DNA of 64,000 nt from Ylistrum balloti (taxonomy: Eukaryota): assembly GCF_031769215.1 (NCBI RefSeq), contig NW_026782129.1, positions 806,001 to 870,000 of the forward strand, given 5' to 3'. The notes below the pieces were generated by a model, which was not told the DNA's origin, did no database searches, and saw nothing but the letters and a program-made list of their open reading frames with translations. Below, piece by piece: positions 1 through 49,724 of this stretch (the stretch's first letter is position 1; the number at the start of each line of letters is the position of its first letter). The position numbers were made by a program, and so were the translations under genes.

Positions 1-99
1 TTTTCTGTGACTTTTTAAAAAGTCTGTTCTGCCTTTTTCCTGATTTTACTGAAGTGTTTGGGAATGTTTCTAACCTCGAAAACTTTCTTTCAATCTTGC

Positions 100-730
100 A
101 TAGACATGGCAACATAATCATAATTAAACACAAATTCCATAAAACTAGGGCAACCCATGAACAAAAAAAAAGATTTACACGGAGACTACTGGAAAAAAGG
201 TCATGGAGAATAGGACCATGTGCTCCGGAAGATTAAGCATCTTCTGCTTCATCGACAACACCCGCAATGTAAAACTTGGTCAATCCGTCTAAGTAATGTC
301 ACGTTCTCAAAAGAGAACAAGGTATACAACAACGGATCCAATGGGCAAACTAACGAGCATCAAATACTTCTTGTCACACAAAGAAATGAAACATTTCTCA
401 ATGAGATCTCTATGGCGACCATAAAACTTCCCTATAATGTTCATCAACCTGCATCGTTTGAAACCGTGTGTTACAAGTTTGTCAGTCAGTTGACGACTTC
501 TTGCCCGAAAATAACGGTACATTTAGAACAGACCCTTCGATATCGAATTAACTATGACATGTAAATTCCATAGGCTGGAGATGCTATCAAGAAATTTGAA
601 ATTGACAATAGGGAAATTGAGTCATCACGTTTATCATACAGCTTGATGGAAAGCTTTCCATTGTAGTTTCGTTACAGGAAAGGATAGAGATAAGCAACTA
701 GTGTAGAAGAGTCTGTCTTCTATCTGAAGG
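100..730 (-). mobile_element. Penelope-like element (PLE), 3' fragment
   Basis: Minus-strand relics TDSST, KLYDKRDD, PAYGIYMS*LIRY, DKLVTHGFKRCRLMNIIGKFYGRHRDL, followed by the shared 3' non-coding end. Confidence 0.8.
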
Positions 731-904
731 TGAAAGTAAACTTCACCGTCTAAGCATGACAAGAAGCATCTTTGATCTTACTTCCGTGCAGATTGCTAGC
801 TCTGGTTAAGCATGAATCATCTGCTATTATTTAATGGAATTGAGTTTAAATTCCTCGTATATGCTTGACCTTTAACCTGATTCATACTTATTATTATTAT
901 TAAG

Positions 905-3654
905 GAATGGATTCTTGTGTCTACTTGTTCTGTTTACCGGAGTAATGATTGGCATGTATTCCACATGGGTTACCATATTTGGAATAACGTTCGAACATCT
1001 CGGTATTGCTCAGGTAAGGTACTTTTATATATTAAACTGTGTTGGTCATGTTCTTCACACTTGGTTCATCTCCTTTCAAGTGTCGTGCATCAATGACAGT
1101 TCCTTCTTAATCATTTCAATAAGCCATTCTAGGTACGTTATGTGAATTAAAATATCATTTCATCGAAACATCGGTTGATGTAACGGATTCTTTTATTTCT
1201 ATGACTTTATGCTGTGAAGTATTTGTTGTGTAAAAAGTGTCAATGCTTTCATACATACGGACAAATCATGAAAGTAAAACAAATAAGACTTCTTATAAAA
1301 TGTATCAAGTGATAAATTATGTTATATTTAAGGCAGTTGCTACCCTTTGCAGTTGATCATGATTTTAGCACCCACTAAACTTTCCTGTGATGCATACAGT
1401 ATGTGATTTATTCAATGGGTAGGTTTCTGAATGTTGATACTAGATTCAACAGTAGACAACATGACTCTGGTACGGTAGAATGTACTATTGTTTTTGTGGC
1501 TATAGATCTTACTTAATTTGTTAAATACTTTGCAGACAGAAGCTGGATGGCTTGGGTTTTCTTGTCTGATAGCCAGCAGTGTTGTGGGATTTATATCTGC
1601 AAGGTAATGTAGAGCTTATCTGTAACTTACTATGTATCACTTTAACATGCAACATGATATAACTAGTAATGTCAGTTAGCCCAGCTATCATTCGATCAAT
1701 GTTACATTAGATTCATGGAAGCATTTATTTGTAATTCCTTACGTATGCTATATGTTATATCTCCAGGTTTTCTGATATCTGCGCTCGGAGATTGAAGACC
1801 ATCTTGATGATAATGTTGATTATTGCCAGTCTTATGTTCCTGTGGGTTTCCTTGTTATGTAGTCAGTACATTGAATACAGTGAAGGTATGATTATAACCC
1901 CCATGTAGTATAAATCACAGTTGGTGTGCAAAACAAGTAGCAGATACTTGTGAAACGAGTTCAGTAATATGAAATTATTATTACTTAATATGATTTCAAG
2001 AGCATAAGTAACAAATAACGTATAGGGACAGGCGCTTGATATCATTCCGTTAAACATCTTTTAAATGATACTCATCGTCATTTAAATGAAGACTACTCAT
2101 ATCCCAATCAGCTTGAATTTTCTTTGATATAAAAAACATTTTGTTAAGTGTATCTACAAATAAGTTGTTCCTACAAGTTCTTATAGTTTTCGTTGATCAC
2201 ATACGCTTGAATGATCATTATTTTCTTTTTAAATTATTTCACTCGATACCAAACCTTTGGTCGTCCACATTTACAGGTATTTAGTTGGATATGGAACTGC
2301 AAGAGTAGAAAAAAACAAGGTCTCCAATGAAGGTTTTCCTCTAAATTTCACGAAACCACTAACTCTTGGCAATTACAAAGGTCGAAAACATTTGAAATCA
2401 TCTCTTTCATAAAGCTTAGTTTTTATCACGATCAAAGCTATTTTTCTAACATTAATAAACTTTTCGTATTTTGCTATAGATAGGTAATATGTTATTTAAG
2501 TGAGTCCTATTTTTGTTTTAGAACAACTGTATGCATCGACAGTTATTGCCTGTGCCTTCCTCAACGGTTGTGTACCGTTACTATATGAACAGATGTGTGA
2601 TGCCGCTTTTCCTATTCCAGAGGGTATCATTGTTGGAATATCTGGACTTATAACAATGCTAGGAGGCATATTTTACATACTGCCAATCTCCCTCGTCGAG
2701 TTTGAAGGCACGTGTATTTTAATTGACCAGGTTTGACTGACGCCTTTCAATGTATCCTTAAAACCAATCCCATATGAAATGGATGAAGTATGATACTTTA
2801 TTGAAATATACGGTAATGCGCTCTATTTGCCCAATCTGTTATTAGATTCGTGGTTAGCGATTGTAATTAAAACCAAACAATAGGTCCAAATCCAGAAACA
2901 TTTGCTAAGAGGAAACTGTGTACATGAAACTGATTATAAGTTAAACAAGTAACATATGTACATCAGTAACAAAAATTATAAACATAAGGTCATTGCCTTT
3001 CGCTCATTTAACACTATGAACGTGTACACACTGAACTCACATAGTTATGAAAAATGTTGCCAGATATTAGCAGAAATGCTTGAACAAGATATGATGTGTA
3101 GTACATGTTTCACATTTGCTGATTGGTTTTGAAAATTCAAAAATATTGGAATTTACATGTACCGAACTACAAAGATACACGTTTTGAGAGAGGCTATTGA
3201 TATATATCGTCGAAAGGTTCAATGACCAGGTGATAGTAGTGTGAGTCTTCAGATTTAAGTAGACCCCCANNNNNNNNNNNNNNNNNNNNNNNNNNNNNNN
3301 NNNNNNNNNNNNNNNNNNNNNNNNNNNNNNNNNNNNNNNNNNNNNNNNNNNNNNNNNNNNNNNNNNNNNNNNNNNNNNNNNNNNNNNNNNNNNNNNNNNN
3401 TTTGGTAATCTATTCAGAGGACAAATTATAAAAGATATTTACTTTTGCTGTTTTCAGATAACTCATGGTTGGAATGGTCAATACTAGTGATATGTGTGAT
3501 TGGTTGTCTCGTAGTGCTGATCACCCCCCAGAGGAATGGACGGAGCGATCTCGATTTGTCCATTCATGTGACTAAGACCACTCACTATAAAAGATTCGGA
3601 GAAGATCAGAATAACTTCCTTGTTACAGAGAAAAAAGATACTGAAAATGCCTGA
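905..3654 (+). CDS. SLC49A4: SLC49A4/DIRC2-like MFS transporter, copy A (3' part only, exons 8-12; 5' exons lie upstream of the window)
   Basis: Exons 905-1013, 1536-1603, 1767-1885, 2522-2707 and 3458-3654 join in frame. The four internal exons match copy B in size (109/68/119/186 nt). Peptides include NGFLCLLVLFTGVMIGMYSTW, EAGWLGF, FLNGCVPLLYEQMCDAAFPIPEG and WLEWS...PQRNGRSDLD. The intron 11 donor is GC (2708), or a weak GT 6 nt later. Confidence 0.88.
3270..3400. other. Assembly gap (N run) in intron 11 of copy A
   Basis: N characters. Confidence 1.
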
Positions 3655-7960: not shown

Positions 7961-8091
7961 GTTTTTCTTAAACGATAAGTAAGAATTTATGTTTATGATA
8001 TGGGGAGCACAGAAGACACAAAACTGAATTGCACCTTTTTTTATACAAGTTTATATTTAGGTACAGCAGAGCCAAAAAAGGAATAAAATTT

Positions 8092-8133
8092 CATCACACA
8101 ACTGTTTCGTCCCTCTAGAACTCATCAATGATG
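8092..8133 (-). ncRNA. Minimal type I hammerhead ribozyme motif H1 (decayed)
   Basis: Minus strand CATCA-TTGATGA-GTTC-TAGAG-GGAC-GAAA-CAGTTG-TG-TGATG. Stems I and II pair; C3 is U and the cleavage nucleotide is G. Confidence 0.8.
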
Positions 8134-9189
8134 CTTATGGTCTAAATTATGAAGCCTTAAAGATATGACTTACAATAATCCCAAAATGATAAAAAAATGT
8201 CAATATCTAGATTGGGATTAATAGATTTATATTATGGAATTAATATTTTTCCTCTTGTTTTAACGAAACCACGACGATAATGATTGGATGATTATTCTAA
8301 GCACCCTCGATCATTTTGTATCAAGAAATATAACGTGACAACTAATATTAAAAAAAAAGCATCCGAACTGAAGGTTAAACTATACATGCAATCACTTGTA
8401 AGATGTCATTTGACGCAATGTCACGTGGCTAGATGCGGGAGATATCATGGTACTAGAACGAACGTGCCATACAATATGTATAGGGGCACGATTCTCATCA
8501 TTACATGAAGGATAGGCCACAAATCTTGACGAATCAAAACATATTCGGTATAAACCAGTTTCGTCTGGACCTTGGTAAATGCAAAGCGGGTTGTAGGCAC
8601 AACCTATATTTAGGGTTAAACCCCGTGACTTTGAAAGTCATTAAAACTACATGGATGTATTTGTTCAAATAAGAGCTGTGATTGGAAAACATTTGCGTTG
8701 GCTGTAAAATTTTATTCGAGCAGTATGTCTATATAAGTAATGCTTGTCAAGACTGCAAATGCTACTGTTTTATTCACGTGTTTGTACAAACGCGAATATA
8801 GAAAAGACTATCGTTTTGATAAATATACACACAAGTACATGACATGGAACTATTTAAACATCGTATTAGGGGTTTTGGCTGAAAGCAAATATTTCAGTCA
8901 ATATGTGTTGTCCTCTAATTTGTAAAAAAAAAAACCACTTAATAAAATAAAATCCAAATTTCTATTTTCAGTGTGCCTTAAGACCCAATATGTATCTGTA
9001 TATCATATCTCACACTGGCATGTATTTTATGCTACAGCGCAGTTGATGTGCGCTTCAAAACCAGAAACTTATTGAACTTTATCTACACCTTTCATGCAAT
9101 CACACTTGATAACATATTTCAGAACGTCTAAGAAAAGCAAGGTGTTTCTTTTGAAAACGCTTAAGCGTGATAGACCACTTCTCAGGAAC

Positions 9190-9350: not shown

Positions 9351-10541
9351 AAGGCTATTAAAAGAGAGGAAACCATCCTCTGATATTCATTAAGTAAAAT
9401 AGATGGGCAAGGCATTTCTATAATTTCCAGGAACCAATATTTATATATAATATTCAGGATATTTTCCGACCAGTTTCAGACAAAACACTTAATAACGTAG
9501 ACTTACTTGTTAATACATCTCAAAAAGAAATTATTGGCCAGAATACGACGAAAACCTTAATAAAATGCACGTACTTAATATTTTTCACTTCAACGATATC
9601 AGCAAATGGGTTAAATTTGAGATGACATGATACTTGTACTTTTGCTTTACAATTTTATTATCTTTAATATTGTTTCTCCAATATGGAACTTAACTAACAA
9701 CGTTTAGGAGATTTTAACATGAAAAGTCTTCTTTTTTCAGTATAATTAATATCTTAACATTGCCTTAATTATCGAATCCATACTCCATATATGATGAATC
9801 TATTTATGCACTTGTAAAAAGAAGTTTTAAGTAATCCCAAAACAGAGAATTGTATCTCTAGAGAGCTACCACATCACGCAGTATCAAGGTCACATGTTCA
9901 GATGTCTGATTACAGATAAAACAACCTCATATACATAATCTCTCATTGTTATTGTTGAGGTATATGGCTATCCTGTTTTTGCGTAACCAGTTATAACTGC
10001 TCTTCTCCTGTTCCAGCAAAGACTTGGGCTAATAATAACTAACACTATTCTGTAGAGAAGTCTTAGTATAAATAGATCCACGAAAAATCAGTTGAGTAGT
10101 TTTTAAGTAACTTGTCATTCAAATAACCACGTTTGTACCTGAGGGATAAATCAGAGTAAGTATTTCGACAAGGTACATGTTTATCATTGTAAAGACCATT
10201 GATGTCATGCAAATAGAATACTGCCAGGTTGATTTGACAACGTTACTGTTAACATATTTACTTATTTTAAAACGATAGAACAAACGTCAGTTGTCAACGA
10301 TGTCCTTTAGGCTTGTCGATTAAAGCATAAGTCATTTACATGTCTTACGCCTTAATATCGAATAATTCATTCTTGCATTAGTTACAATAGAATACTTCAA
10401 TTTGATTGTCTCAATCTTATCCTCCCTTTAATTGATTTGAAATTTCACATTTCACCCCGACCGATGATTCATAGTTACAACAATGTAACAATAACATGGT
10501 AAATAACCGAAAGTAATCTACGTTTTTCAGAATTCATAGCA

Positions 10542-13500
10542 ATGGATGAGGTGAAGCCATTACTGCTCCTGAAACCAAAGGCGTACGCCCGCCGTTGGTG
10601 GGTTCTTATGTACGTCAGCCTGGTGATGGTATTCATCGTACTCAGTTGGAATACATGGGGCCCTATCAGTCAGTCAGTAGAGTATGGTTTTGGCTGGGAC
10701 AATTCCATTATAGCAGATATCCTCACGGTTGGACGAATAGGGGCTTTTTGTAGTATCATTCCATTAAGTTACCTGGCAGATATGAAAGGTAAGTGGAACT
10801 TGTAGTAATACTGATTAATTCATCACAATTTTCTCATTTTTTTCAGTCAAAACATGGAGAGTTGCTTTCTACGATAGTTCTTTTTGGCATTAATGTTTAG
10901 GTCATCCTGACCCATTGTGTTTCGTCCATCGTCGTGCGCTGTTCGCCATGCGTAAACTTTTCATTAAAATGATTTCTTTTAATAACCAAAAGGGCAAGGG
11001 TGCTGATATTGCGCTAATAAATGATATTGATCCACTTTCAAGGTCAAAGGGACTAAATGTTTTTTAAAAGTTTTTTAAACGATTTCTTTTCAATGACCAG
11101 TAGTCCCAGTGTGCTGAACATGTAGAATTCTGAGATGAAGTTCTACCAAGGTTTTTCTTATTGTCGACCCTAACCCACAAGAGATATGCACATATTAAAA
11201 ACAAATATGTTTTCATTTATAAATTCCGGTTGACCTGTATGTTTGAAATCTACATCTATCTTATATCATTATGTTTACTTACTACCTGATTTCACCAACT
11301 TCGTACAATGCTTAGCATAAGTTGGATATAAGATCTGCTCACTACTGGAATAATCATGATACATGAAATTAATTATTTGGTGTGATAATATGTCTGTGTA
11401 ACGTTTCCTCATTATTGAAAGTCTCCCACGTACGCAATTATCTTTCTTGTTTAACTTTTGACGTGGAATTTTATTCGCTTGACCTAAAATTCCAAATTAT
11501 ATATACCAGTGATGGGTCTTAAGTGGACAGCGTCATCACATTGTCTTGCATTTACACAAAGAAATATCTTGCGATGTCAATGAAACAAAGGGCAAATATT
11601 TCACACTAAAATATTTCATCATCGCAAAAAAAGCAGTTAGAAACATCATGAATTAAGAACGAATTCCTAATAAGGAACGAAATCGAAATTTTGTTAATTT
11701 CTAGGAAGATTCTATGACAGCTACCGTTCTTTTTGTTTCCTAAAGGGATCCGTTATGCTATGATTACAAGCACGACTATGGTACTCGCTGGATATGGATT
11801 TCGTTGCGCCATAAATCAATCAACTTCAACGTGGTTTGTATATTTTTTTCTTATTTAAATCTGACATGATGATGTTACTTAACTGAATTGTCATTGCTTT
11901 GTTAAAATATTGAATCTAAAGTTGTGATGTGAATTACGAGCTCACCGAAACATATTGGTACTCGACATGTGATCGATGTGATTCTACAAACCGTGTCATT
12001 TTGTTAGTATATTGTCAATTAACAGCATTTTGTCCGAGTGAGCTATGTTGATAAATGTTCTGCATCCATTCATAAGCGACAATTACCACTATTAATGTTA
12101 CAGCTAATTTTGTATCCACTAATTACTATGATGTGTTATAAATTGATATATCAGTCCTATAGTTAAGTCTTCTTTCCTGATATATTTCTCTGTATAGGCC
12201 AGCATTGTTAGGGCAGATATTTGTCGGTAGTGGGATGGGGATTGCATACAGTGGTCCAGTCGCCATGTCAGCAGCGTGGTTTCCACCAAAAGAACGTGCC
12301 ACGGCCACATCTATTACCGTTATGTGTACATATTTTGGATATGGGATGGCCTACATTATCCGTACGTATTTAATTCCCTGTCTCATCTGACTTTGTCGAG
12401 GGAGCTCTTTTGAGACCACTTCTCTTAACATATATTTATAACGTATATGTTATAAACTAAAATGTCTTAAACTTAATTCTATAACTTTAGATAGCTACTT
12501 ATAATTGGGAAATAGTTTAAACATATCTTATTCAATATGACATTGTGGAATGGGCAAGTATCATGATATATCTTCTGATCACTGCATATTAAAAACACAT
12601 TTAATGAATTGAGCATGTGATAACAGCAATGTTATCTATCATTAGTACAAAATAAGTGCTTATGGCTTCTCCTGAAGCCACAACTATGTTTGAACCGTAG
12701 ACGTTTCGATATTTTTCTGAAAACTGATATCGTGCATTTTCTTCATAGATCCACTACTTGTATCAACACCCGTATTTGGTGAGGATGTCTCCTCTTACTG
12801 GAATACTAACCAAACGTAAGTCTTTCATATAAACTTCTTGTCACTTCTTGTGCTAAAGCAGACAGAATGTTTGAATCGAAATTTATTACAGAAAACTCAT
12901 AATGTCCTCTATTAACATTTCCCAAAGCAATAAATTATTTCATGTCTAAAATACCCCGAAACAGCTATCGTGAAAATAATGAACTATTTGAAAATCTCGG
13001 GAATTCCTGTTTGGTGCTGGTATATACGTAATGAATGGTTGTAATATAATATGTCAAAATGTATCAATTGCATTTACTTTTTGATAGGAATTTTCTTTTG
13101 GGTGCAACTATTTACAGGCTATAAAAAAGATACATTTACAAAGTTATCCAGATTAATGAATGAACGTCTCATGTACATTTAAATTGCAGGGAGCGCATTA
13201 ACTATACCGATCACAATCTTAGTACCGCTGCCACCCTGACCAATGGTAGCTCTGGTAAAATTGGTATGTATTCGTATGCTATATTTTACCATTTAAATAA
13301 TAGAAATAAGAAAGCTGTACGAGCAGTAAATTTGAAGAAACAACCCATCAGAATTAGACTTCCTCTTCGACATATCAAAATCTATCGATTGTTATCAGTA
13401 TGTGACTTTGTATTATCGATTTTTATCAGTATGTGACTTTGTATTTGTAACATTGATATCTTTCGTCTTTCAAAATTTAACTTTAAGTAGACAAGTTTCA

Positions 13501-16500
13501 TGAATCTCATATGAAGTGGAAACAAATGTAGCGTGATGTTTATAAATTATTCATAAATACTTTCTCAAATTCCATGACACAAAGAAGTTATGATGTTACA
13601 ATGGAAACGATGGGAACTTTTAGTCAATTACAGCTAGGTTAAATGACACGTATGTCATGGCAAAAAATATGTAACTGATGATTAACGTGGTAGTGATATG
13701 ATGAACCAAGATCTCCGTAGAATACTGCGTGGTACAGCCCGTTCAAATAAGTACCAATTTGTTGTTAATTATTAAATGCTTATAACACGACGTCAAAGAT
13801 TATTCTACAAATGCCGTTGGTTTTTCGTTTTAATTTCAAACAGTTCAGACATACTTTCATAGTTTAACAATTGATCATAACATTGCTATATCAAGCTATA
13901 TCTATAAACTAGATTGTTGTTTACAATTCATTCAAAGAATTTGTTCGGACATGTAACAAAATGCAGAATAGTGTAAAAGTAGAATTCACAAAGTTAGATA
14001 TACAATTAAAATACTTTTTCAATGTGACATGACCAGGCATACAGTACATGTGGAAATGTAAGGGGCTCGAATTCCTTGTAAATGCGTTTCCATAGCACAG
14101 AAATGTTTCCAGTGTAAACATTGGTATTATCTGCCAGCTAACATTCTGCAGTGGAGAGTAATTGTTTTAATTTGGATGTTTTCCATTGCACGCAATATAT
14201 GATTATCGACCATATATCACTGATTGTTACGTCTGATGATACATATTAAACCTGAAGGACTATATAGATGATAACTTTACACTGGTATACAATGGCTATT
14301 AACCTTGTCTGCCTCTTTACATAACTAATCAGATAAACAAATTATTGTTTAACTATGCTTTATAAAGCGTCATTCATTTCTGGTGATTTTTCTGAAACAG
14401 AATATGATTTCATAACAATATTTCTGATTGAATCACTCAATAAAGCTAGCCTCGTTTTTTCAGTACTGAACAAAGACAAGATTCAAGAAGAAACAATGAC
14501 AATGACGTACATAGGTAAACAATGATTACACTAATATCTGTTAAACGCATGTGATTGTCTGTAATAATATCATTAAAAGGTTTGCAGCTGTTGATATTAC
14601 TTTTTGGCGTTAAGTAAGTGTGAGGGTTTATGTCTGTACATGGCACGGATGCACTTTCAACAGCTGTGCCAATACTGACTCGTTTTGTCTGATTAATTAA
14701 TGTGAAAAATACCTTTATTAACAAAATGGTGCATTCTAAATGCATACTTTTTATTTTATTTTCAACAACATTTCAATAGTGTTAGAATTTGTTGTATTAC
14801 TGTTTCAGAGACGGTGATTGCAGCAGTTCTCGTGGTAGTTGGAGTAACTCTGCTTCCGAACGTTCCACCCTCACCTCCTTCCTATAGTGCAAACGCAGTT
14901 AAGATGGGATATACCAGAGTATTTTTACACGTCAAAAGGTAGAATAGAAGAAAGGATTGCTATTTTCTGCATCATATCAAATTGAAAAGTCATCTCAAAG
15001 GGGTTGAAAGTCTGTCGAAAATTTAAGTACGTCATTGCACTCCTATAAGTAAATCATACATAGATATCTCTATATTTATCTCCAAGATGCAAGAAATGCG
15101 ACTATAATGTATTGTTAATGTCATACAGAACATTTAAGTGTGACTGTTTTTTTTTTATTTCGTCGCCTATTGATGGAATAACCTTTATGTATTAGGTTTG
15201 TTATACTTAATTTCGAACTGATATATTTTATTGTTTAGTTAGATAACATCAGATTATAAATGAATGCAATTGGTGAGCTTTTTTAGTAGTGATAACATAT
15301 AGATGTGTACTTATGTATTTCTTTGAAAGTTAGAAATTTTCTGATTAAACATAAATGTTTCGATTAGATACACACCTGAATCAACGAACGAATTTGAATC
15401 TAGGCTATTTCTGAGCATGTATCTATTAAATGGAATATGACAACTAACAATAACAATACACATGCAAACCAACGGCAAGTTTTTACAGTTTTATTTCTTA
15501 TGAAAGGAAAGCCGGCATTAATTCTCAATAAAAAAAAAAAACCCCAAAAAACAAAAAAACACAAACAGCAACATCCAGTCCCGTAACTCTGCTAACATTA
15601 GCAATTAGATTTATATCCAACGAATCGAAAACATAAAATAGAAATGAAATAACGTGATGCACTACACAACATCTCACTGGCGATTTGTTTTGATTACATT
15701 ATAAAACGAATGAATTCAGACCTCGGCTGGGCGTCCAGAAACGGTACAAAGTGACATACATTAGAAAGACCTTGTAATTAATACATTTTTGATATGTTTA
15801 AATGTAAATGTACATGGTAGTAATAAAAATACACATTTATTTTGGGAACCATTGGATTATGTAGCTGTTCCTTTATTGTAGAAATGACATTATATTCAAA
15901 GACAACAGTAGAAATTGTTCCTGATTGTATTTCATCAGTTTGCTGTAGATATGTTTTGTGATTATTTTAAACACAAACAAGATTGAGAACTTTCTGTGAG
16001 CATTTTTTTTTATCAAAGCGATATCTCTCTGGTAAACCGACGAACGTATGAAGTCGGCTTTAAAGATGACGTAAACATTAATAAATCATTGATTTTTGAT
16101 AGCCAGGATACCGAGGTTGTTTTATCAATACCTCTAAAGAATGATTCATAAATAACATCATTGACTATTATTATGAATGGATTCCTCTCGTCATGCCTAA
16201 CATTCCATCCTCGCTATATTTTCTCAAACACTCGAAAATGTGATTAAAAGTTCACAAATACATTGTCGTTGTTACATCATATGTATTCCAAATAAGATAT
16301 CAATGCGAAACTCAAATAGAAATCACGGGCAAATGTTGGGTCATCTGCATTTAAAAAATGAATATCGTACTATTTTCATTTGTTTTGACTGTTTACCATT
16401 TATGTTTTATTTCTAATAAGGAATGGTTTCCTGTGTTTGCTAATACTTTTTACTGGTGCCGTGGTCGGGATGTATTCCACATGGATTGCCATATTTGAAA

Positions 16501-18540
16501 TAGCGTTTGGCCATCTCGGTGTCTCCCAGGTAACAAGCCTCGATATACACAAGTATGATATTCATAATCATTTTAGAGCAACCTTATGGTCTAACAGTAC
16601 CTTACTGCCATGGTGATAACTGTTTGTTTTAAGTATTTCCTAATCCTGTGATCTAATTAAATAGTAGTCATAGAATGAACCAATAACACTGGTAACATGG
16701 GCTATATGTCTACCATCCAATGTTTCATAAGAGTACGATCGGTACAGTGTTCATTTTCTCTCATTTCGATAGCCCTAACTTTTAATAAAAGAGAATGTAC
16801 TACATCCCCGGATATCGGAAAATACATGATATTTAAATTAGGTTAAAATGGTGTATCATTCTAAAGCCATCAGGGAGTATAATTGCCTTTCACTTCGAAT
16901 GTTGTATTCAATACAGAAAGAAGCTGGATGGCTTGGATTTTCTAGTCTCATAGCAAGCAGTGTTATAGGATTTATATGTGCAAGGTAAGATTGCTCTTTA
17001 ATATATTCGGGTAGTTGTTTTGATTTTTGTTATTATTTCATTTGTTATTATTGTATTGATAAATAAGCATTTATCAGATATGAAGTTACCTTATTAGCAT
17101 TATTTTGTATTTCTATAGTTTGAATTGAGTTACCCATGTTTGATTGTATGCACTAATATGCATACTCATTATTTCACTTCGGGAACTATAAATTGTCAAT
17201 TGCACCGTTTATCTAATTCCATTTTGATTACCCATGCGAACTCTTGAAAATGTGTATTATATGGAATAAAAATAACCTTTGGATGCAATATTTAGGTTTT
17301 CAGACATGTGCGCTCGAAAGTCGAAGACGATCCTAATGTTTATGTTAGTAATTGCCACTGTTATGTACCTTTGGTTGTCGCTGCTGTGTAGTCAGTACAT
17401 CGCCTTTAGCAGAGGTAGGTGATACTGGGAATACATATCGTCAACTCGTTACATATGCCCTACCTCACCCCTATACATCACATATAACACTTGGCCATAG
17501 GTAAGGGACAATCAATTTCAGTTTGAAAATTTTGATGAAAACTAATTTTTCCTTTTGTTAAAATAAGCCTTCTCGTACTCAGTGCAGTGTCTCGTTTTGG
17601 TTTGGTGCCGTTTGCCACAAAGCGATACAACAAATTTAGTGATAACCGGGATTAAACTCGGGTACCCTTTACTCCAAAAAATACAAGTTTGTTTTGCCAT
17701 CAAAAGTAGCATTTGCACATAAAGTACTGGTAAATCATACACGTGATCAAATTGTGTTTAGAAATGGTACGTTGAAAATTGACAAAGGATGAAAGTTGGC
17801 AGACTTCTGAAATGGTTTATTATGGTATGACGTACAGGCAAGTTACTCCACCTCGAAAGACTACAACTAGAGAAAATATAGATAGGCAAGATGAGCCCCA
17901 TTCTCCCATGCGTAAGCTTGTGTTTACCGACCAGTAAAACGCCTTCTGCTGACTAGAGGGCACAAACAAGCAAATACTGCAACTGACACGTGATCACCAG
18001 CGTGCAATATTAGGTCTTGGTTTAGAGCGCCATGGTCTGATGAAAGCCGCTTTTTACATAGTACACAGACAGCAGGTTCTTGTTTTGTAATACGACATAC
18101 CATCAGAATCACATTATGGGATGCTTTTCTCTGAACAGTAAGCTTCTCTTGTATGTCCTTATCATGTCGAAAATGAAATGGGCAGAATACCGTGATAAGA
18201 CCCTTCGAAATTTAGCTGCATTGATTGAGTAGTAACAGAGGTTTCCTCCGAATAAGCTTCGGCGTCTGGTCAATAGTATGAGATTACGGACACAAGAACT
18301 GTACCAAAGGCATGGTGGCTATTCCCGTTATCGTCATTTTTATATCAACTAGAACTCGTTGATAAATTAATCTTCTTGGTTCAGTAACATATTGATGTGA
18401 TTCGATGATGTATCTTGAATAAGAGACAGGTACAGTCATTTTCCCTATAGGCCTGACTTTTGAGAATAAATTGTATATAGACGATGTGAACATTCCTATG
18501 TATCCTGTTGAGAAAATAAAGTTCAATATTTTTCCTGAAT

Positions 18541-18589
<49 letters not shown>

Positions 18590-20213
18590 AAACAAACAAA
18601 ATTAAGCCCAAACTAAAATACAGATTGTCTTTAACATATGGCCAATGTTTTAGATAAATGTCATTTATCATATACGCATGTACATATACTAAATTTACTT
18701 ACATTTACTAAATAAATAGACATAAATTGCATGGACATTGTAAGTGACACGAGTAACAATACAGAAATTGTTAATATTTATCATAGAAGTTGGTTATAGG
18801 CAATGATAAATACTGCTTAATTTTCCATATTTGAAAAGAGATGATTTAAAACCATGTAGGGAAAATACAAGAATGTACAGAACATTCTGATTTTCTGTTT
18901 TTAGAACAGCTGTACGTATCGACGATCCTTGCCTGTGCCTTCCTCAACGGTTGTGTACCGTTACTTTACGAACAAATATGTAACGCTGCTTTTCCAATCC
19001 CAGAGGGTATCATTGTTGGAATATCTGCCATTGTGACAACGTTGGCTGGCATTCTGTATACATTACCGTTGTCTCTCTTCGTGTTTGAAGGTAATTTAAT
19101 ATACAATTGCATCCATGTATCAATATATCATGGCACACATTACATTTTAACATAGTTTTACGCACTGAACACGAGAGGATTACATCCCTTGTAAATTTAT
19201 TGAGTTGTAAATGACACTTTAAATAATAAGAATCACAAACTATCATACAGCTGTTCCGTCCTTCCAGGACGCGTCAGTGATGTTAAGGGCCCAAAAACTG
19301 AAACCTACGAAGCGATAATTTCAGTAGAATATGTATATGCTGAACTGTGTTTCTATTGTAATGAACTAAAACATTGGATGCAGGTTTCGTCACACCCACT
19401 AACTGCAATCTCGAAGATTTGATACACAAACAAATGAATTACACTTTTCAATACCAGTTTAGAGTTCGAAATGAAGTAAATTTCATTATATAGATGTTTT
19501 GTCCTTCAAGGACTCGTCAGTAAAATAATCTGTTAATATGTTAATACAACAAATCAGTGAGAGCGGGCAAGCTTTCACACTTACAAATGTATCCGTATTG
19601 CGCTGTAATTGAACATACTATCCACAGATTGATCTTTGATGTGCTTCCAATAGCTTGTTCTATTAAAATGAAAGCAGATTTTCAGTATTAGTTCAATCGC
19701 TGCGTATAATGTATTAGTTAATCTATTTTTCAAAAATTGAAACGGATTAAACTTCACAGCCGGAGGACAGTCTGTTGAGAAAATGATTTCCAATAAAATG
19801 TTAGTTACAATAAGCAGTACTTTGAAATTTAATGCATTGTTATTGAAAAAAGACTCATCCGTATTTGTTATAGTAATATATTAATTTACATTTAGATGGT
19901 AAATTGCCACTTAACTGTAAGAAAGTGATTTCGTTACTATGTATATCAGGATATATTGTTATGGGATGTTTATTAGATATTCAAATAACGTTCAACATGT
20001 ATATATATTTCAGGTAACACGTGGTTAGAATGGTCATTACTCGTGGCGTGTGTGCTTGGTTGTATTGTCATATTGGTCACTCCCCAGAGAAACGGGCGAG
20101 AAGATATGGATTTGTCTATTCGCGTGACTAAACCTGTGCCTTATGAAAGATTCGGAAAGGAGCACAAAGTCTTGTTTGTGGAGTCTGAAACGAAAGTTCC
20201 AGAGAACGCTTGA
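10542..20213 (+). CDS. SLC49A4: SLC49A4/DIRC2-like MFS transporter, copy B (complete, 12 coding exons, 500 aa)
   Basis: Exons 10542-10788, 11746-11833, 12198-12361, 12749-12815, 13190-13263, 14464-14514, 14809-14938, 16421-16529, 16917-16984, 17296-17414, 18905-19090 and 20014-20213. All introns are GT-AG, phases are compatible, total 1503 nt with no internal stop. Family motifs: RRWWVL...WNTWGPI, MFS motif A (DMKGIR), SAAWFPPKERATAT, PPSPPS before TM7, N-terminal ExxxLL. Confidence 0.93.
10895..11175 (+). mobile_element. Possible non-autonomous Helentron/HINE-like repeat fragment in intron 1 of copy B
   Basis: Starts TTTAGGTCATCCTGA...CGTCCATCGTCGTGCG...CGTAAACTTTTCA, resembling the 5' architecture of molluscan HINE/pearl-type repeats; recalled similarity only. 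Confidence 0.3.
13384..13445. repeat. 31-bp tandem duplication
   Basis: ATCGATT(G/T)TTATCAGTATGTGACTTTGTATT twice, one mismatch. Confidence 0.95.
15670..15960 (+). repeat. Unclassified dispersed repeat, copy 1
   Basis: Shares TCTCACTGG.GA.TTGTT.TGAT...TTCAGACCTCG.C.GGGCGT..AGAAACGGTACAAAGTG with 46425-46690. Confidence 0.75.
17486..18460 (+). mobile_element. Old, heavily decayed Tc1 transposon in intron 10 of copy B
   Basis: Plus-strand peptide relics in the expected order: RKTTTRE (~17855), LTRDH, WSDESRF (18033-18053), TLRNLAALIE**QRFPPNKLRRLVNSMRLRTQELYQRHGGYSRY (to 18331), the last matching the C-terminus of the 54-kb Tc1. Ends are approximate, with only weak TIR similarity. Confidence 0.75.
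18545..18588. repeat. A44 homopolymer followed by (CAAA)n
   Basis: Direct reading. Confidence 0.98.
19241..19282 (-). ncRNA. Minimal type I hammerhead ribozyme motif H2 (decayed)
   Basis: Minus strand CATCA-CTGACGC-GTCC-TGGAA-GGAC-GGAA-CAGCTG-TA-TGATA. A9 and A13 are mutated. Confidence 0.8.
19484..19525 (-). ncRNA. Minimal type I hammerhead ribozyme motif H3 (decayed), 243 nt from H2
   Basis: Minus strand TTTTA-CTGACGA-GTCC-TTGAA-GGAC-AAAA-CATCTA-TA-TAATG. CUGACGA and stem II are intact; G12 is mutated and stem III is damaged. Confidence 0.78.
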
Positions 20214-25270: not shown

Positions 25271-25491
25271 AAATTAAAAACTAGTAAGTAAAAGAAAGTG
25301 GGATAATTTTTCTCTTAGATATACATATAGTCGTATGGGAGATACTGCGAACCAGATAATCAATCATATTAGGAATTTTTTCTGTGTATATTTTCTCTTT
25401 GATTTGAACATAATTTTAACGAAATACACTTCAGTTTAATTTGAAAGCATGGCTATTGATCACCGTTCATCATTCGTTGAAAGTGAATGTT

Positions 25492-25533
25492 TATAACACA
25501 ATTGTTTCGTCCTTTTGAGACTCAACAGTAATA
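25492..25533 (-). ncRNA. Minimal type I hammerhead ribozyme motif H4 (decayed)
   Basis: Minus strand TATTA-CTGTTGA-GTCT-CAAAA-GGAC-GAAA-CAATTG-TG-TTATA. Stem III is still a palindrome (CAATTG); A6 is mutated and the cleavage nucleotide is G. Confidence 0.78.
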
Positions 25534-27493
25534 CTATGGGCCTATGCACATTTAGTTAGACATATGTAGATAATACACAGATAAACTAATGCATTTACAA
25601 TGGCATTGCGATATAGACACCAAGACGGAGAATGTGACAAATTGACATTCGAAATTAAAAAACCTGGAGTATTGTGAGAACGGTTGCTTTGTACTTGATG
25701 TTTTGAGTTGAGCGACCCGGCTAGGTAATCTAATATTTATACTGTCATGCACAAGTACACAGACTTAAAAGGACATCAACAATGTGTATTTGAAAGTCGA
25801 AATGTGTTTTTCATATCGTAGGTCTTCTACTTGATGTTAGAGCGAGGGTATGTAAGAGTGCGGGAGTGTGACGGAGACATTCATTCACTTAGACTAGGTT
25901 CATATATTGAGTTGATATGAGGAACGAGTTCAAAAACTCTACCGTATATCACCACGTGTACGCTTAACTGATTGGTTTGTATACCGCTACAGGATCATTA
26001 GTATTTGTAACATTTATGAAATGTGCCCGACAGAGTTAACTGGACGTTGCAAGACAACCGGAAACATTAAAGTAAGTAACATATAAATTTTCTAGGTAAC
26101 ATATAACTTTTCTAAGTACATATCAATTTATTTACGTTTCCCGTAAAAAAGAAAATATGAAAATCGAGAAAAAGAAATTGATTTGCTGCAGCTGTTGTCA
26201 CACTTTCCACAGGACTATTAAATACAGTCCTTGTGCTTATTTTACGACCCTCAAAAAGTTAAGTGTATTGATATGTCTATCGTAAAATTTTGATGTTAAA
26301 TGACAATATTTTTCTAAATAAAGAAATACATGATGTGAGTACTGAATTCACACCAACACATACTAAACAATGTAACATTCTGATGGTGATCTTTTTAAGG
26401 GGACATTTATTCCCAGATTAAATTAAACCGTCACTATTCATTTGGATGAATTCTCCCTTACTTTTTTATTACATGATAGACTAAACATTGTTGTTCATTG
26501 ACTATCAATATTTCCGGAGGATCACTACCCTCACCGAACAAAAACAATTATGAAAGATTTTACAACTTCTAGTACCACCATAGTTTTGGGGACAAGGGGA
26601 AAACCTGGGCCATTTTATCTACGCAGAAGACCATTTGGAATAACTAAACTCTATGAAATATAAAACAAATTGAAAATATTTTGTGTCGTCACTGTTAAGA
26701 CATCATTGAGATCACCTTACTAAAAAGTTAAGTAATAAAAGTCCCAGAAGACTAAACAGACTATTGACCAGTAATAAAAAAACTCGCACCACAGTTACCT
26801 GATGTGTATTCCATAATGACCATCGGTCAAGTGTTAGGTTGGTTTGGTATATGCAGGAGTTAAAATGTCTTCTCAGATACAACTACTATATGTTTATCAA
26901 AGAAAACCAGATCATTAGTTCAATGACGAGATCGAGCACCCGTGTTCTTTGAAGTAAGGTTTCACTGTATATAAATCGCAAATAACACACGTATCATTGT
27001 AATTTAAAGATGATTTACTGTGCCTCTGGTTTTGTAGATGACGGGCAATACGAATTGACCTATTATTATTCAAGTCGGAAAATAAATAACTTGAAATATT
27101 ACCAGAACAAACAACTCTATATGCGTTTTACACATACACATATCATGTGTCTCTTAACTACTTTTTCTCAACACAATACACAGGTACGTTCTCCGACATA
27201 CAATAAATTCTTCGCGGTATTCACATGTATATCAGATATATCGTAGATATAATATTTCAAATATAGGCAGCCTTATGTTCCAAGAATCCTTTTTATGTCC
27301 ATTATGAAAACCAGAATTAGCAGTATGATGACAGACATATGTTTGTGACACTGTCTGTTTTTATTTCCTGAAAGAATTGAATGGTATTACATTAATGTAA
27401 ATACTTCTCGGTAGACGACGCGTTTACTTTAAACTGTTCCATTTTTACAGTAACTCTTGCTATGATGAACGTAAACTAGATTCGGGGGCAATT

Positions 27494-30400
27494 ATGAACG
27501 AGGAGAACCAGTTACTTGAGTCGCCCAGTCGGATCTATCGTGCACGCTGGTGGATGCTTTTGTTGTCGTCTCTTCATTTCCTTCACCAGAATGTCGGCCT
27601 TAACACCTGGGGACCAATAGCACAGTCAGTCAAAAGAGCATTTGACTGGGAAGATACCACTGTAGTTTTTATTCTCAATATGGGTCGAGTGGGAAGCATC
27701 CTTTACATGTGCGTTGGATCATACGTGTTGGACAAAGCGGGTATGCATGATTACCATATGTGTCGTTAAAATAAGAACCAAAGTAAGATATTCCAGAAAT
27801 ACATCGAAGAAGGTTTAACTGATAAAGGATTTATTCTACGAAACTGATTGAACAAAACATTCTAAAATAGCATAACTGGTGTCTTCACTTAGATGGTATA
27901 AAAGACAAACATTGTGTTAAACTGCATCATACAGCTATTTCACCCTTCTAGGTCTCGTTAGTAATATTAAAGACCTACATTTAGAAGCCTTGAAGACGAC
28001 AGAAGAAAACTCAGGGTGATCGAAAGGAAAGAAAAGAAAAGCCTCTAGGTTAAGCTTTTGAAAGAGAGGGAATGTATTCTATCAATAATGGACTATTATG
28101 TTCTCAACGAATCTCCGTTAGTTAAAGCACAATTGCCCATGCAAGTTCGTTGGAAAGTATCAAGCGAAACAAATGAGCGCGTGGATTTTAAGTGGTTGGC
28201 ACTTTGATGTACTTTAATGTATCGTTTTTGTGATGATCATTTGAATCCACATTAAAGCAGAGATTAGATACATCAAGAAAAGGATAACTGCTATTGTTAA
28301 AACATATTTTATCATTGAAATAAGAAACATTCACTTGAAATAGGAATCATTTTCGAAAAGGCATCATCTCGGTTGATAATGCTAATTTTAGTAAACTTTA
28401 TTTTCCCCGAAATTAAAATTTTGTTTCAGGTTTACGAGTAGCAATGCTTATCTATTCTGTTACTATGCTATTAAGTAACGGTTTACGATCACTAAGTACA
28501 GACAAAGACGTAGCGGTGATGTAAGTATATATATCATATTGTTTATTTAGGAGAGAAAGTGTTATTGATTTCCGTTCAGAAATCATGTTTCAGTTGTTTT
28601 GTTCTTGCTAACATTTTGTAATTCTAACTTGAGATTGATTCACTCCATCATTGTCCAATCCAGTTCTCAATCATCTTGTTTAGCAATTATGGATACTAAT
28701 ATGGTATTTTTTTCATTTAAAGACTTATTACGATCGGAGAATTTCTAAACGGGTGTAATGGCGTAATAACATTTGCAGCGCCACCAATTATAGCAGACAG
28801 GTGGTTTCCACCAGGTGAGAGAATTACCGCATCAGCCATCATGGTGCTAGCTGCATATCTTGGTGAAGGGCTGTCCAGTATAATTGGTAAGTAAAAGAAC
28901 TTACATAATAAAATCGACAGTCTTGCAAATCTCATCTTAAAAGGGTTTTTTTAAGTAGCCCGCAAGGATACACACATTTACATACCTGAATCGTTTACGT
29001 TTGCTTGTGTGATTGCTAAAGTACATCTCCCTCACGGAGTGAGCCAGATGGTGTAAGTAAACAAAGAATGCTGTAAAACTACTTAGATCATGTATACTGA
29101 TGAGTTTTGTATCATGTTAATTAAAAACAGGTAGAATATAACAATAAGTCTACCCTCCACGTCGAAATCCGTCTTAAAACGTTAATTTACATATTATCTC
29201 GATTTGCTTTACCCTGTTGATAAGTCAAACGTATTGAGTGATCGTCACTGCCTGACAAACTCATAACGCGAGGGTTCAAAAGATGCAAGTTGATGAAAAT
29301 AATTGGGAAGTTTTATGATTGCCATAGTGATCTCGTTGAGAAATATTCAATTTCTTTGTGTGAAATGAAACTGGACGTATGTGATGCTCGTTATTTTGCA
29401 TATTGGTTCCGTTGTTTTATATCCTGTTCTCATCTGAAAGCGTGAGATTACTTAATTGGTTGACCAAGGTTTACATGTCGTCGTTGAAGCAGAAGACGCT
29501 TACTCATCCGGAACACATGGTCTGATTTTCATTGTCTCTTTTCAGGAATATCTCCTTTCATTTGTTTATATTTTGCCCTCATTTTATGGAATTTTAGTTT
29601 GAATTATTATTATGTTGCCATGTTGGTATTAGGTATGTTTCTTCTAATATCAATTGATTGATTAGAAACAAACATCCTCATGAATTGTTAATGCAATATT
29701 ATACAGAAACTGCAGAACTACGGACCTTTCAACATGTACAAACCGAACAGTCACGAACAACTTCAAGTCATGCAAACGATGCAAGCTTGAATACGGAGTT
29801 TCAAATATCTGTTTTAGTATCCGTTCAATGGCCTCTGGTTATGTATAGTTGGTGTTGAACAATCATGATGGAGACGGATATCGTGTTTAGTCTGAACATT
29901 GAATAGATGGACGTAAATAATGCTATTACGAAGGTTCGTCTGTTTTCTGTCATGGAAAGATCTTTATCGTTAAAAGCGCATTAAATTTGTCCTTGAAATG
30001 TACCTATAACTCCACCTTTTAACATGAAAATGATGAACAGGTATTAAGTAAAGTAAAGCGTCGATTGTTTAGATTCGAACATGCGAACACTTTTTTATGA
30101 AACACAATTCGTTGAAACAATGTGAAATGTACGACTAAAAACACGGTTTACACAGTGACCATTCAAAATATCAAAGCATGAGAAAACAGGGGGCCCCGGA
30201 AAGATAATCGTCCTCGTGCTTCATGGAGGTCACCCGCCATTTTAGTGAACACAAAAAGGTCATTTAAAAGAGAACTACGTTTACAATAACAAAGCCACCA
30301 GGCATTTCTGTAATGTTCCGATAATATCATCGCAAATTTCAATATCATATAAATAATATTTACATGAATTATCTAATGTAAATATACAAGCAAGAAATAA

Positions 30401-46690: not shown

Positions 46691-47295
46691 ACATTCTGTA
46701 TTCTGTATATGGCGAATGTATTATATTGTAAAGTAACCTCCCGAATTGTAATGATGCTTATCATCTGTGTGTCGTTTGTACAACCGTTGAGATAGCAGGT
46801 AGTAGACACTGCTGGTAAACTATGAGTCCCGGAGTTTACTTTATCTGAATGGTGACACGTTTCAGAATATACATATGCACTTGACTTTTTTTCTTAAATC
46901 ATCAAATATAGAAATGTTACGAAATTTACTGAATTATTTGTCTAGTGCACTTTCCTAGCTCTGGCATTTATTCGGTCACTTTAGATTTTACCATGCGCCG
47001 CCCAGTAGGTTCTTAGAATCATTGGCGAGTCCTAGAATAACGAAACGGATATATAATGCAGTTTAAGTCATTGCTTGGATTTGCTGCATCTTATCCAATC
47101 TTGTTTTATTAAATGTTGCGATAATTTTGTGGATACTTCTGTACAATCTTTGAAGTATTGGAGAAGTAAAACCAATCCAAACAACCATTAAGTACAAGAG
47201 CTCTCAACATGGGATGTTTTTGTTCTATATCGTACAATTATCATTAATATATTTTGACATTTTGGATTTTCCTCAATCGTCATCAGGAGTTTTAG

Positions 47296-47337
47296 CATCA
47301 GTGAGGATTCCTAGAAGGATGGGACCTACAATATAGA
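47296..47337 (+). ncRNA. Hammerhead-motif relic H6 (strongly decayed; the only + strand copy)
   Basis: CATCA-GTGAGGA-TTCC-TAGAA-GGAT-GGGA with the same spacing; the upstream flank resembles the H1 flank (AATCC..AAAATG). Confidence 0.5.
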
Positions 47338-49590: not shown

Positions 49591-49694
49591 TAAAATGTGG
49601 TATGCAGGTTACTGTTTAAAAAACGCATACTTTTATAGCATCTGTTAATACAAATTTAGAATTAGATACAAACATCAAATGATGAATTAATATG

Positions 49695-49724
49695 CATCAC
49701 ACAGCTGTTTCGTCTTCAGTGTAA
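49695..49724 (-). ncRNA. Hammerhead-motif relic H7 with most of stem II deleted
   Basis: Minus strand TTACA-CTGA-[deletion]-AGAC-GAAA-CAGCTG-TG-TGATG, about 120 nt upstream of the copy D start codon. Confidence 0.62.

What the first reader, a model, noticed from the sequence alone, without database searches (positions are those of the whole stretch)
19241..19525. Tandem hammerhead pair delimits a 243-nt retrozyme-like monomer inside intron 11 of copy B
Seen: H3 and H2 are in the same orientation, with predicted cleavage points 243 nt apart (19489 and 19246). The spacer segment GAATTACACTTTTCAATACCAGTTTA (~19436-19461) recurs at the equivalent side of H1 (GAATTGCACCTTTTTTTATACAAGTTTA, ~8028-8055) and more weakly beside H7 and H8, so the spacer is part of the repeat unit. 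Established: metazoan retrozymes are non-coding tandem units of a few hundred nt, each with one type I hammerhead, whose double self-cleavage yields monomers that circularise. They have been reported in mussels, corals and salamanders. Inference: this is a decayed dimer junction of such a circular-RNA replicon family.
Basis: partly seen in the sequence, partly recalled or inferred. Interest (0 to 1): 0.8.

Follow-up and report, generated by a model that had tools for sequence, protein, structure and literature searches.

The report
Decayed hammerhead retrozyme insertion in intron
The two self-cutting-RNA (hammerhead) motifs 243 bases apart are real but both broken; they belong to one old, partly deleted insertion of a roughly 400-base mobile repeat present thousands of times in this bivalve genome, so this is an ordinary relic of a known kind of element.

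Summary
Two type I hammerhead-like motifs lie on the minus strand at 19240-19283 and 19485-19526.

Both motifs are dead. They score 18.8 and 18.5 bits against Rfam's cut-off of 34. H2 has A9>C and A13>G; H3 has G12>A.

The interval is not a 243-nt monomer. It is one unit of a dispersed family whose hammerhead-to-hammerhead spacing is 394-397 nt, shortened here by three deletions of 16, about 30 and about 112 nt. The largest deletion's junction occurs nowhere else in the 648-Mb genome, so no 243-nt subfamily exists.

Family copies share a sharp 3' end about 95 nt past the ribozyme and have scattered 5' ends. Of 87 copies, 19 run into a preceding unit and 10 carry a second, upstream hammerhead. 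That is the partial-tandem insertion signature of Penelope-like elements.

The window copy (about 19154-19537, minus strand) is such an insertion, antisense in an intron of a plus-strand MFS transporter gene. It fits the published non-LTR retrozyme kind. This scan had already found the same family elsewhere in this genome. RNA circles cannot be tested here. Interest is low.

The parts
19154..19537 (-). Whole insertion: about 1.3 units of the ~400-nt hammerhead repeat family. It consists of a truncated leading copy plus one internally deleted unit plus the 3' tail.
   Evidence: Three colinear nhmmer hits to the family profile: 19521-19426, 19437-19328 and 19315-19169. Colinear alignment with six other two-hammerhead copies. 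The 3' end near 19154 and the 5' end at 19526-19537 are approximate, read.
19485..19526 (-). H3: upstream hammerhead remnant (leading, 5'-truncated copy). G12>A and the 15.2-16.2 pair is broken.
   Evidence: Rfam RF00163 at 18.5 bits against a cut-off of 34. The sequence reads GGAC-AAAA where the family has GGAC-GAAA.
19426..19484 (-). Carries a 16-nt deletion.
   Evidence: Profile positions 355-423. The same segment lies beside H1 at 8009-8060.
19316..19437 (-). Body of the unit, with a ~30-nt deletion. The ~112-nt deletion junction lies between 19328 and 19315.
   Evidence: Profile positions 13-154, then a jump to 278 across 12 nt. Alignment. The junction is unique in the genome.
19284..19315 (-). 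Conserved segment immediately upstream of the ribozyme (U).
   Evidence: Genome hits to H2 plus its upstream segment span window ~19237-19315; their upstream limit is 19315. Profile positions 278-309.
19240..19283 (-). H2: downstream hammerhead remnant, with A9>C and A13>G.
   Evidence: Rfam RF00163 at 18.8 bits against a cut-off of 34. Core check. 93% identical to the 45-nt family ribozyme unit.
19154..19239 (-). Decayed 3' tail (D'), ending at the family's fixed 3' terminus.
   Evidence: Profile positions 355-421 reach 19169. The last ~15 nt are read by eye against the family terminus.
18850..19099 (+). The exon's 3' end (19099) and its open frame, which is stop-free from 18850; the acceptor was not mapped. 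Exon of the host MFS-type transporter gene (copy B), followed by a GT donor at 19100.
   Evidence: Stop-free frame, paralogous to 2500-2733 and 60120-60407. Neighbouring exons hit Pfam MFS_1.
19989..20210 (+). Stop-free frame holding the last exon of the same gene, running to its stop codon; the acceptor was not mapped. The insertion therefore lies in the intron between this and the previous exon.
   Evidence: Stop-free frame paralogous to 3409-3651.

Best explanation
This is a single old insertion of a non-autonomous, non-coding retroelement of the 'non-LTR retrozyme' type. The family unit is about 400 nt: a body of ~230 nt, a 45-nt type I hammerhead with a palindromic helix III, and a ~95-nt tail that ends sharply at ...TTGTACAATCT.

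Inferred mechanism: the family RNA was copied into DNA starting from that fixed 3' end, by the reverse transcriptase/endonuclease of a Penelope-like element. Copying often stopped early, giving 5' truncation. Sometimes it ran past the start of the unit into a preceding unit of a multimeric or circular template. That yields a full unit preceded by a truncated one, i.e. a partial tandem or pseudo-LTR.

In the window copy the leading piece begins just at the upstream ribozyme (H3), so two hammerheads frame one unit. Later neutral decay removed about 158 nt and mutated essential core bases in both ribozymes.

The element lies antisense in an intron of an MFS transporter gene. It is expected to do nothing now: it cannot self-cleave, cannot release a 243-nt RNA, and is not read in the sense orientation by the host transcript.

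Shown here: family membership, unit length, the deletions, dead cores, the fixed 3' end with variable 5' ends, and the intronic antisense position.

Inferred only: mobilisation by a Penelope-like element, and a family life cycle through self-cleaved or circular RNA.
For: - Family membership and colinearity across the unit boundary.
- Family abundance: 3751 first-look candidates for one unit and about eight copies in this window.
- Unit spacing of 394-397 nt in 6 of 6 clean cases, with none between 201 and 350 nt.
- The deletion junction is unique.
- 56 of 87 copies end at profile position 428 or later, while 5' ends are scattered from 3 to 346. Nineteen copies cross a unit boundary and 10 include most of an upstream ribozyme.
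- Sharp 3' boundary seen in the alignment.
- Intact family ribozymes pass Rfam's cut-off (35.8 against 34), whereas the window's two score 18.8 and 18.5.
- Open frames encoding RVT_1 plus GIY-YIG, the Penelope-like architecture, exist in this genome.
- Published descriptions match. Mussel retrozyme repeats are 350-390 bp with type I hammerheads (PMC7229834). Penelope-like insertions are 5'-truncated partial tandems with the hammerhead near the 3' end (PMC8557442). Retrozymes are related to the pseudo-LTRs of Penelope-like elements (bioRxiv 10.64898/2026.07.22.740005).
Against: - No autonomous partner was tied to the family. Only 4 family hits fell within 1.5 kb of 30 GIY-YIG loci, about what the family's density gives by chance, and no hammerhead was found there.
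- No target-site duplication was evident by eye at the window copy.
- Predicted folds of the 243-nt interval and of a 363-nt family unit are no more stable than shuffled sequence (z = 0.22 and -0.54). The compact structure expected of retrozyme circles is therefore not supported, although both copies are decayed.
- No RNA data were available.
Confidence: 0.85

Rival explanations
1. Two independent insertions of the same family landed next to each other by chance, so the 'pair' is not one partial tandem.
For: The family is dense in this window, at about eight copies in 64 kb. One such chance neighbour pair exists here: a complete copy ends at its 3' terminus at 47149, and a separate fragment lies at 47254-47325, placing two hammerheads about 270 nt apart.
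Against: In the H3-H2 copy the tail of the leading piece (profile position 423 at 19426) runs without a break into the start of the next unit (profile position 13 at 19437). The same is seen in 19 of 87 family copies at unrelated loci. No foreign sequence lies between the pieces.
Confidence: 0.06
2. The 243-nt interval is a shortened but functional mini-retrozyme that is cut at both hammerheads and circularised.
For: The two motifs share an orientation. Published animal retrozyme RNAs range from about 170 to 400 nt (PMC7229834).
Against: Both cores carry substitutions at bases essential for catalysis (A9 and A13 in H2, G12 in H3). Rfam scores are about half the cut-off. No other copy has this length or deletion junction. 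The copy is 62-68% identical to other copies, whereas those share about 77% with one another. The fold is no better than shuffles.
Confidence: 0.02
3. The repeat is the pseudo-LTR remnant of an autonomous Penelope-like element that lost its coding region, rather than a dedicated non-autonomous family.
For: The hammerhead lies near the 3' end, and the architecture is 5'-truncated partial tandems. This is what pseudo-LTRs look like (PMC8557442), and retrozymes are reported to be related to them (bioRxiv 10.64898/2026.07.22.740005).
Against: Dozens of sampled copies are complete ~400-nt units joined head-to-tail with no coding sequence between them. None of the 30 best GIY-YIG loci carries the family's ribozyme in its 1.5-kb flanks beyond chance.
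Confidence: 0.07

Closest known systems
Metazoan non-LTR retrozymes (Cervera and de la Pena 2020, PMC7229834), especially the Mytilus galloprovincialis family
   Same: Non-coding, AT-rich (35-40% GC) repeat of about 400 nt. The mussel repeat is 350-390 bp. Each unit has one type I hammerhead. There are thousands of copies in a bivalve genome, some joined head to tail.
   Different: In the sample examined here copies reach at most about 2 units. They share a fixed 3' end 95 nt beyond the cleavage site. The ribozyme alone is often expanded into a 45-nt minisatellite. No RNA evidence is available. The window copy is dead and shortened to 243 nt between cleavage sites.
Pseudo-LTR / partial-tandem insertions of Penelope-like elements, and their non-autonomous derivatives (PMC8557442; bioRxiv 10.64898/2026.07.22.740005)
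   Same: Strong 5' truncation. A full copy is preceded by a truncated copy. The hammerhead lies near the 3' end. Coding elements with RT plus GIY-YIG are present in the same genome.
   Different: No sequence link between this family and any coding element was found. No 30-40-bp 'tail' extension or inverted leading copy was looked for systematically.
Dimer-dependent type I hammerheads of salamander satellite 2 / axolotl retrozymes and of Penelope-like elements (minimal helix III)
   Same: Helix III is the palindrome ACAGCUGU. Rfam models it as a loop-less 4-bp stem. As a single motif it can form only 2 bp closed by a 4-nt loop, so pairing between two ribozymes is the likely active form (PMC7229834).
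   Different: Activity as a dimer is inferred from sequence only. In the window copy H3 has lost the palindrome (ACAUCUAU).

Membership tests
Hammerhead ribozyme type I (Rfam RF00163) | Covariance-model score at or above the curated gathering score (34 bits) | tested here: not met
   The window motifs score 18.8 bits (H2) and 18.5 bits (H3) and are absent from the whole-window scans. Intact copies of the same family elsewhere score 35.8 and 34.1, so the family qualifies but these two copies do not.
Hammerhead ribozyme type I (Rfam RF00163) | Intact catalytic core: CUGANGA ... GAAA ... U-H at the cleavage site, and a paired helix II | tested here: not met
   H2 reads CUGACGC and GGAA (A9>C, A13>G). 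H3 reads AAAA for GAAA (G12>A) and has a broken 15.2-16.2 pair. Helix II is intact in both.
Hammerhead ribozyme type I (Rfam RF00163) | Self-cleavage of the transcript | not testable with these tools
   Needs in vitro transcription of the locus.
Metazoan non-LTR retrozyme | Type I hammerhead embedded in a non-coding repeat unit of roughly 150-450 bp with low GC | tested here: met
   The family unit is 394-397 nt between ribozymes. GC is 35-40%. Only short chance ORFs lie across the element.
Metazoan non-LTR retrozyme | Head-to-tail tandem organisation (dimers to multimers), so that two ribozymes frame a monomer | tested here: inconclusive
   19 of 87 sampled copies cross a unit boundary and 10 carry two ribozyme positions. 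None exceeded about 2 units. Only the best 40 of 3751 candidates were scored, so long arrays could have been missed.
Metazoan non-LTR retrozyme | Monomer-length linear and circular RNAs in vivo | not testable with these tools
Penelope-like-element-dependent (pseudo-LTR type) insertion | Common 3' end, variable 5' truncation, and a full copy preceded by a truncated copy | tested here: met
   56 of 87 copies end at profile position 428 or later, with 5' starts scattered from 3 to 346. Sharp 3' boundary. The window copy starts at about profile position 315 of the leading unit.
Penelope-like-element-dependent (pseudo-LTR type) insertion | Sequence similarity of the non-autonomous element's 3' end to an autonomous element in the same genome | tested here: inconclusive
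   RT plus GIY-YIG frames exist. Their 1.5-kb flanks show no excess of family hits and no hammerhead. Wider flanks could not be fetched.

The most novel reading that the evidence does not exclude
At family level, the sharp common 3' end lies about 95 nt downstream of the hammerhead cleavage site, and copies run continuously through that site into a preceding unit. This would mean that integration uses uncleaved multimeric RNA (or rolling-circle copying from one fixed start) primed at a specific 3' motif. The self-cleaved or ligated monomer would then be a by-product rather than the transposition intermediate. This concerns the family, not the window copy, which is only a dead example.
Probability: 0.3. 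Interest if true: 0.45.

Novelty: new member of a known kind. Interest (0 to 1): 0.15.

Why it matters
It matters little in itself. The locus is one decayed copy among thousands of a repeat type described in mussels, corals and amphibians, and this scan has already reported the same family at other places in this genome.

It is useful in two minor ways. It shows that a 'tandem hammerhead pair' in this genome is the routine partial-tandem product of insertion and not evidence of a replicating RNA at that locus. The family's fixed 3' end and ragged 5' ends also give sequence-level support to the view that animal retrozymes are moved by the machinery of Penelope-like elements.

Tried and rejected
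- Rfam at gathering and at E<=10 over the whole window did not report H2 or H3. They appear only when the short stretch is searched alone.
- A fuzzy-regex ribozyme scan timed out and was replaced by blastn-short and nhmmer.
- Direct-repeat and tandem-repeat finders saw no 243-nt periodicity around the locus.
- Searching the genome with the whole 311-nt interval found no second full-length match. The deletion junction alone matched only itself.
- Folding the 243-nt interval and a 363-nt family unit gave no excess stability over shuffled sequence.
- The search for an autonomous partner covered the flanks of 30 GIY-YIG loci with the family profile, a strict motif scan and Rfam. It found nothing beyond chance.
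- A target-site duplication at the window copy was looked for by eye only, and none was evident.
- My script's core check for H3 used a register one base off. The H3 substitutions reported here are read instead.

Full report
**What is at the coordinates**

Read on the minus strand, window 19240-19283 (H2) and 19485-19526 (H3) each have the layout of a type I hammerhead: a helix I strand, CUGACGN, a 4-bp helix II (GUCC/GGAC) closed by 5 nt, a GAAA-like segment, a short helix III, then the second helix I strand.

Rfam's Hammerhead_1 model finds neither motif at its gathering score, nor at E<=10 over the whole window. When the 361-nt stretch is searched alone it aligns both end to end, at 18.8 and 18.5 bits against a cut-off of 34.

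By homology with intact family ribozymes (GAAAC-AGCU-GUA|UGAUGU), cleavage would follow the bases complementary to 19246 and 19489.

The core pattern occurs 8 times in the window at up to 3 mismatches, against 1.28 expected by chance.

Both cores are broken:
- H2 reads CUGACGC and GGAA, i.e. A9>C and A13>G.
- H3 reads AAAA for GAAA, i.e. G12>A, and has lost the helix III palindrome.

**The family**

The window is contig C272:806001-870000 of a 648.5-Mb assembly. Searching that genome with the interval returned many hits, but only to H2 plus the ~35 nt upstream of it. Many of those hits lie in arrays whose 45-nt unit is the ribozyme alone.

Alignment of the flanks showed conserved sequence on both sides of the ribozyme. 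One locus held a 308-nt direct repeat at a 371-nt offset.

Searching with that unit gave 3751 first-look candidates, of which the 40 scored were 75-81% identical.

Thirteen copies aligned with their flanks show a sharp common 3' boundary (...TTGTACAATCT) about 95 nt after the ribozyme, and ragged 5' ends.

The unit is therefore a body of about 230 nt, then the 45-nt ribozyme (single or expanded into a minisatellite), then a tail of about 95 nt.

The distance between ribozyme positions separated by one unit is 394-397 nt in six of six clean cases. No spacing between 201 and 350 nt was seen.

Intact family ribozymes pass Rfam's cut-off at 35.8 bits. Most copies, however, are decayed: only 8 of 49 solo ribozymes and 42 of 219 array units keep a perfect core.

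**How the window copy fits**

A profile built from the 13 copies hits the window copy as three colinear minus-strand pieces:

| Window position | Profile positions | Content | E-value |
|---|---|---|---|
| 19521-19426 | 315-423 | H3 and tail | 4e-9 |
| 19437-19328 | 13-154 | start of the next unit | 3e-9 |
| 19315-19169 | 278-421 | upstream segment, H2 and tail | 1e-18 |

The first 36 profile positions repeat the last 36, so the first two pieces join seamlessly across a unit boundary.

Alignment with six other two-ribozyme copies shows three deletions in the window copy, of 16, about 30 and about 112 nt. Together these account for 243 nt rather than about 396.

The junction of the largest deletion matches nothing else in the genome, and no other copy matches the interval end to end. 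There is therefore no 243-nt subfamily.

The copy is 62-68% identical to the six others, which share about 77% with one another. It is older or more decayed than average.

The same segment follows H1 at 8009-8060.

**Why two ribozymes**

Across 87 copies in 58 loci:
- 56 end at the common 3' terminus.
- 5' starts are scattered along the whole unit.
- 19 continue into a preceding unit.
- 10 include most of an upstream ribozyme.

This is the insertion signature described for Penelope-like elements and their non-autonomous derivatives: strong 5' truncation, and a full copy preceded by a truncated one, forming a pseudo-LTR with the hammerhead near the 3' end (PMC8557442).

The window copy starts at about profile position 315 of its leading unit, like loci L048 and L010. 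The 'tandem hammerhead pair' is therefore a routine product of insertion.

Open frames with RVT_1 plus GIY-YIG are present in this genome. I could not link any of them to this family. The flanks of 30 GIY-YIG loci held only four family hits, about the chance expectation, and no hammerhead. Longer flanks could not be fetched.

**Context**

Stop-free frames on the plus strand, paralogous among four tandem gene copies, mark exons of an MFS-type transporter. Pfam MFS_1 hits at exon level have E = 1e-7 and 1e-3, both below the family cut-off, as expected for single exons.

The element lies between the exon ending at 19099 and the last exon within 19989-20210. It is therefore intronic and antisense to the gene, and the host transcript would not carry the ribozyme strand.

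**Comparison with known systems**

The family matches the published non-LTR retrozymes in its main features:
- a non-coding unit of 150-450 bp with one type I hammerhead;
- low GC (35-40%);
- thousands of copies, some joined head to tail.

The mussel family has 350-390-bp repeats (PMC7229834). A recent preprint relates such elements to the pseudo-LTRs of Penelope-like elements (10.64898/2026.07.22.740005).

The palindromic helix III (ACAGCUGU) suggests that the ribozyme works as a dimer, as in amphibian retrozymes. This is inference.

Predicted folds are no more stable than shuffles. RNA circles cannot be tested here.

**Earlier notes of this scan**

Earlier notes already describe this ~390-400-nt family and its 45-nt ribozyme minisatellites at other places in the same genome. 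My independent tests agree with them.

**Verdict**

The locus is an ordinary, dead, internally deleted copy of a known kind of element, and its interest is low.

Noticed in passing
L022:1529-1810, L003:1528-2205, L035:1865-3277; also G000:C214:901520-909453 (listed only): The family's 45-nt ribozyme is often expanded on its own into head-to-tail minisatellites of 5 to more than 170 units with no spacer. These lie between the unit's body and its tail. Earlier notes of this scan describe the same thing.
   Followed up: partly
window 46752-47149 (+) and 47254-47325 (+): A nearly complete family unit ends at its proper 3' terminus at 47149. A separate fragment follows 105 nt later. Its hammerhead lies about 270 nt from the first, a look-alike 'pair' made by two neighbouring insertions rather than a unit junction.
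   Followed up: partly
window 8009-8217 (-), 27901-28031 (-), 49618-49714 (-), 60427-60500 (-), 25483-25544 (-): Further decayed copies of the same family. The one at 25491-25534 gives the best Rfam hammerhead score in the window (26 bits, still below the cut-off of 34).
   Followed up: partly
window 10503-20210, 27401 onward, 49837 onward, and 1-3651 (+): At least four tandem paralogous copies of an MFS-type transporter gene lie on the plus strand, recognisable from near-identical exon frames.
   Followed up: no
window 54272-55294 (-): A long open frame of 207 aa plus neighbouring frames. By eye it looks like a Tc1/mariner-type transposase remnant. It was not scanned against Pfam.
   Followed up: no
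L066, L067, L072-L075, L089 (G000:C129 and C422): Open RT plus GIY-YIG frames of up to 755 aa (Penelope-like architecture) recur at a regular spacing of about 5.36 kb on contig C422. This suggests a tandem array of a coding element. No hammerhead lies within 1.3-1.5 kb downstream of the frame.
   Followed up: partly
   Followed up: no
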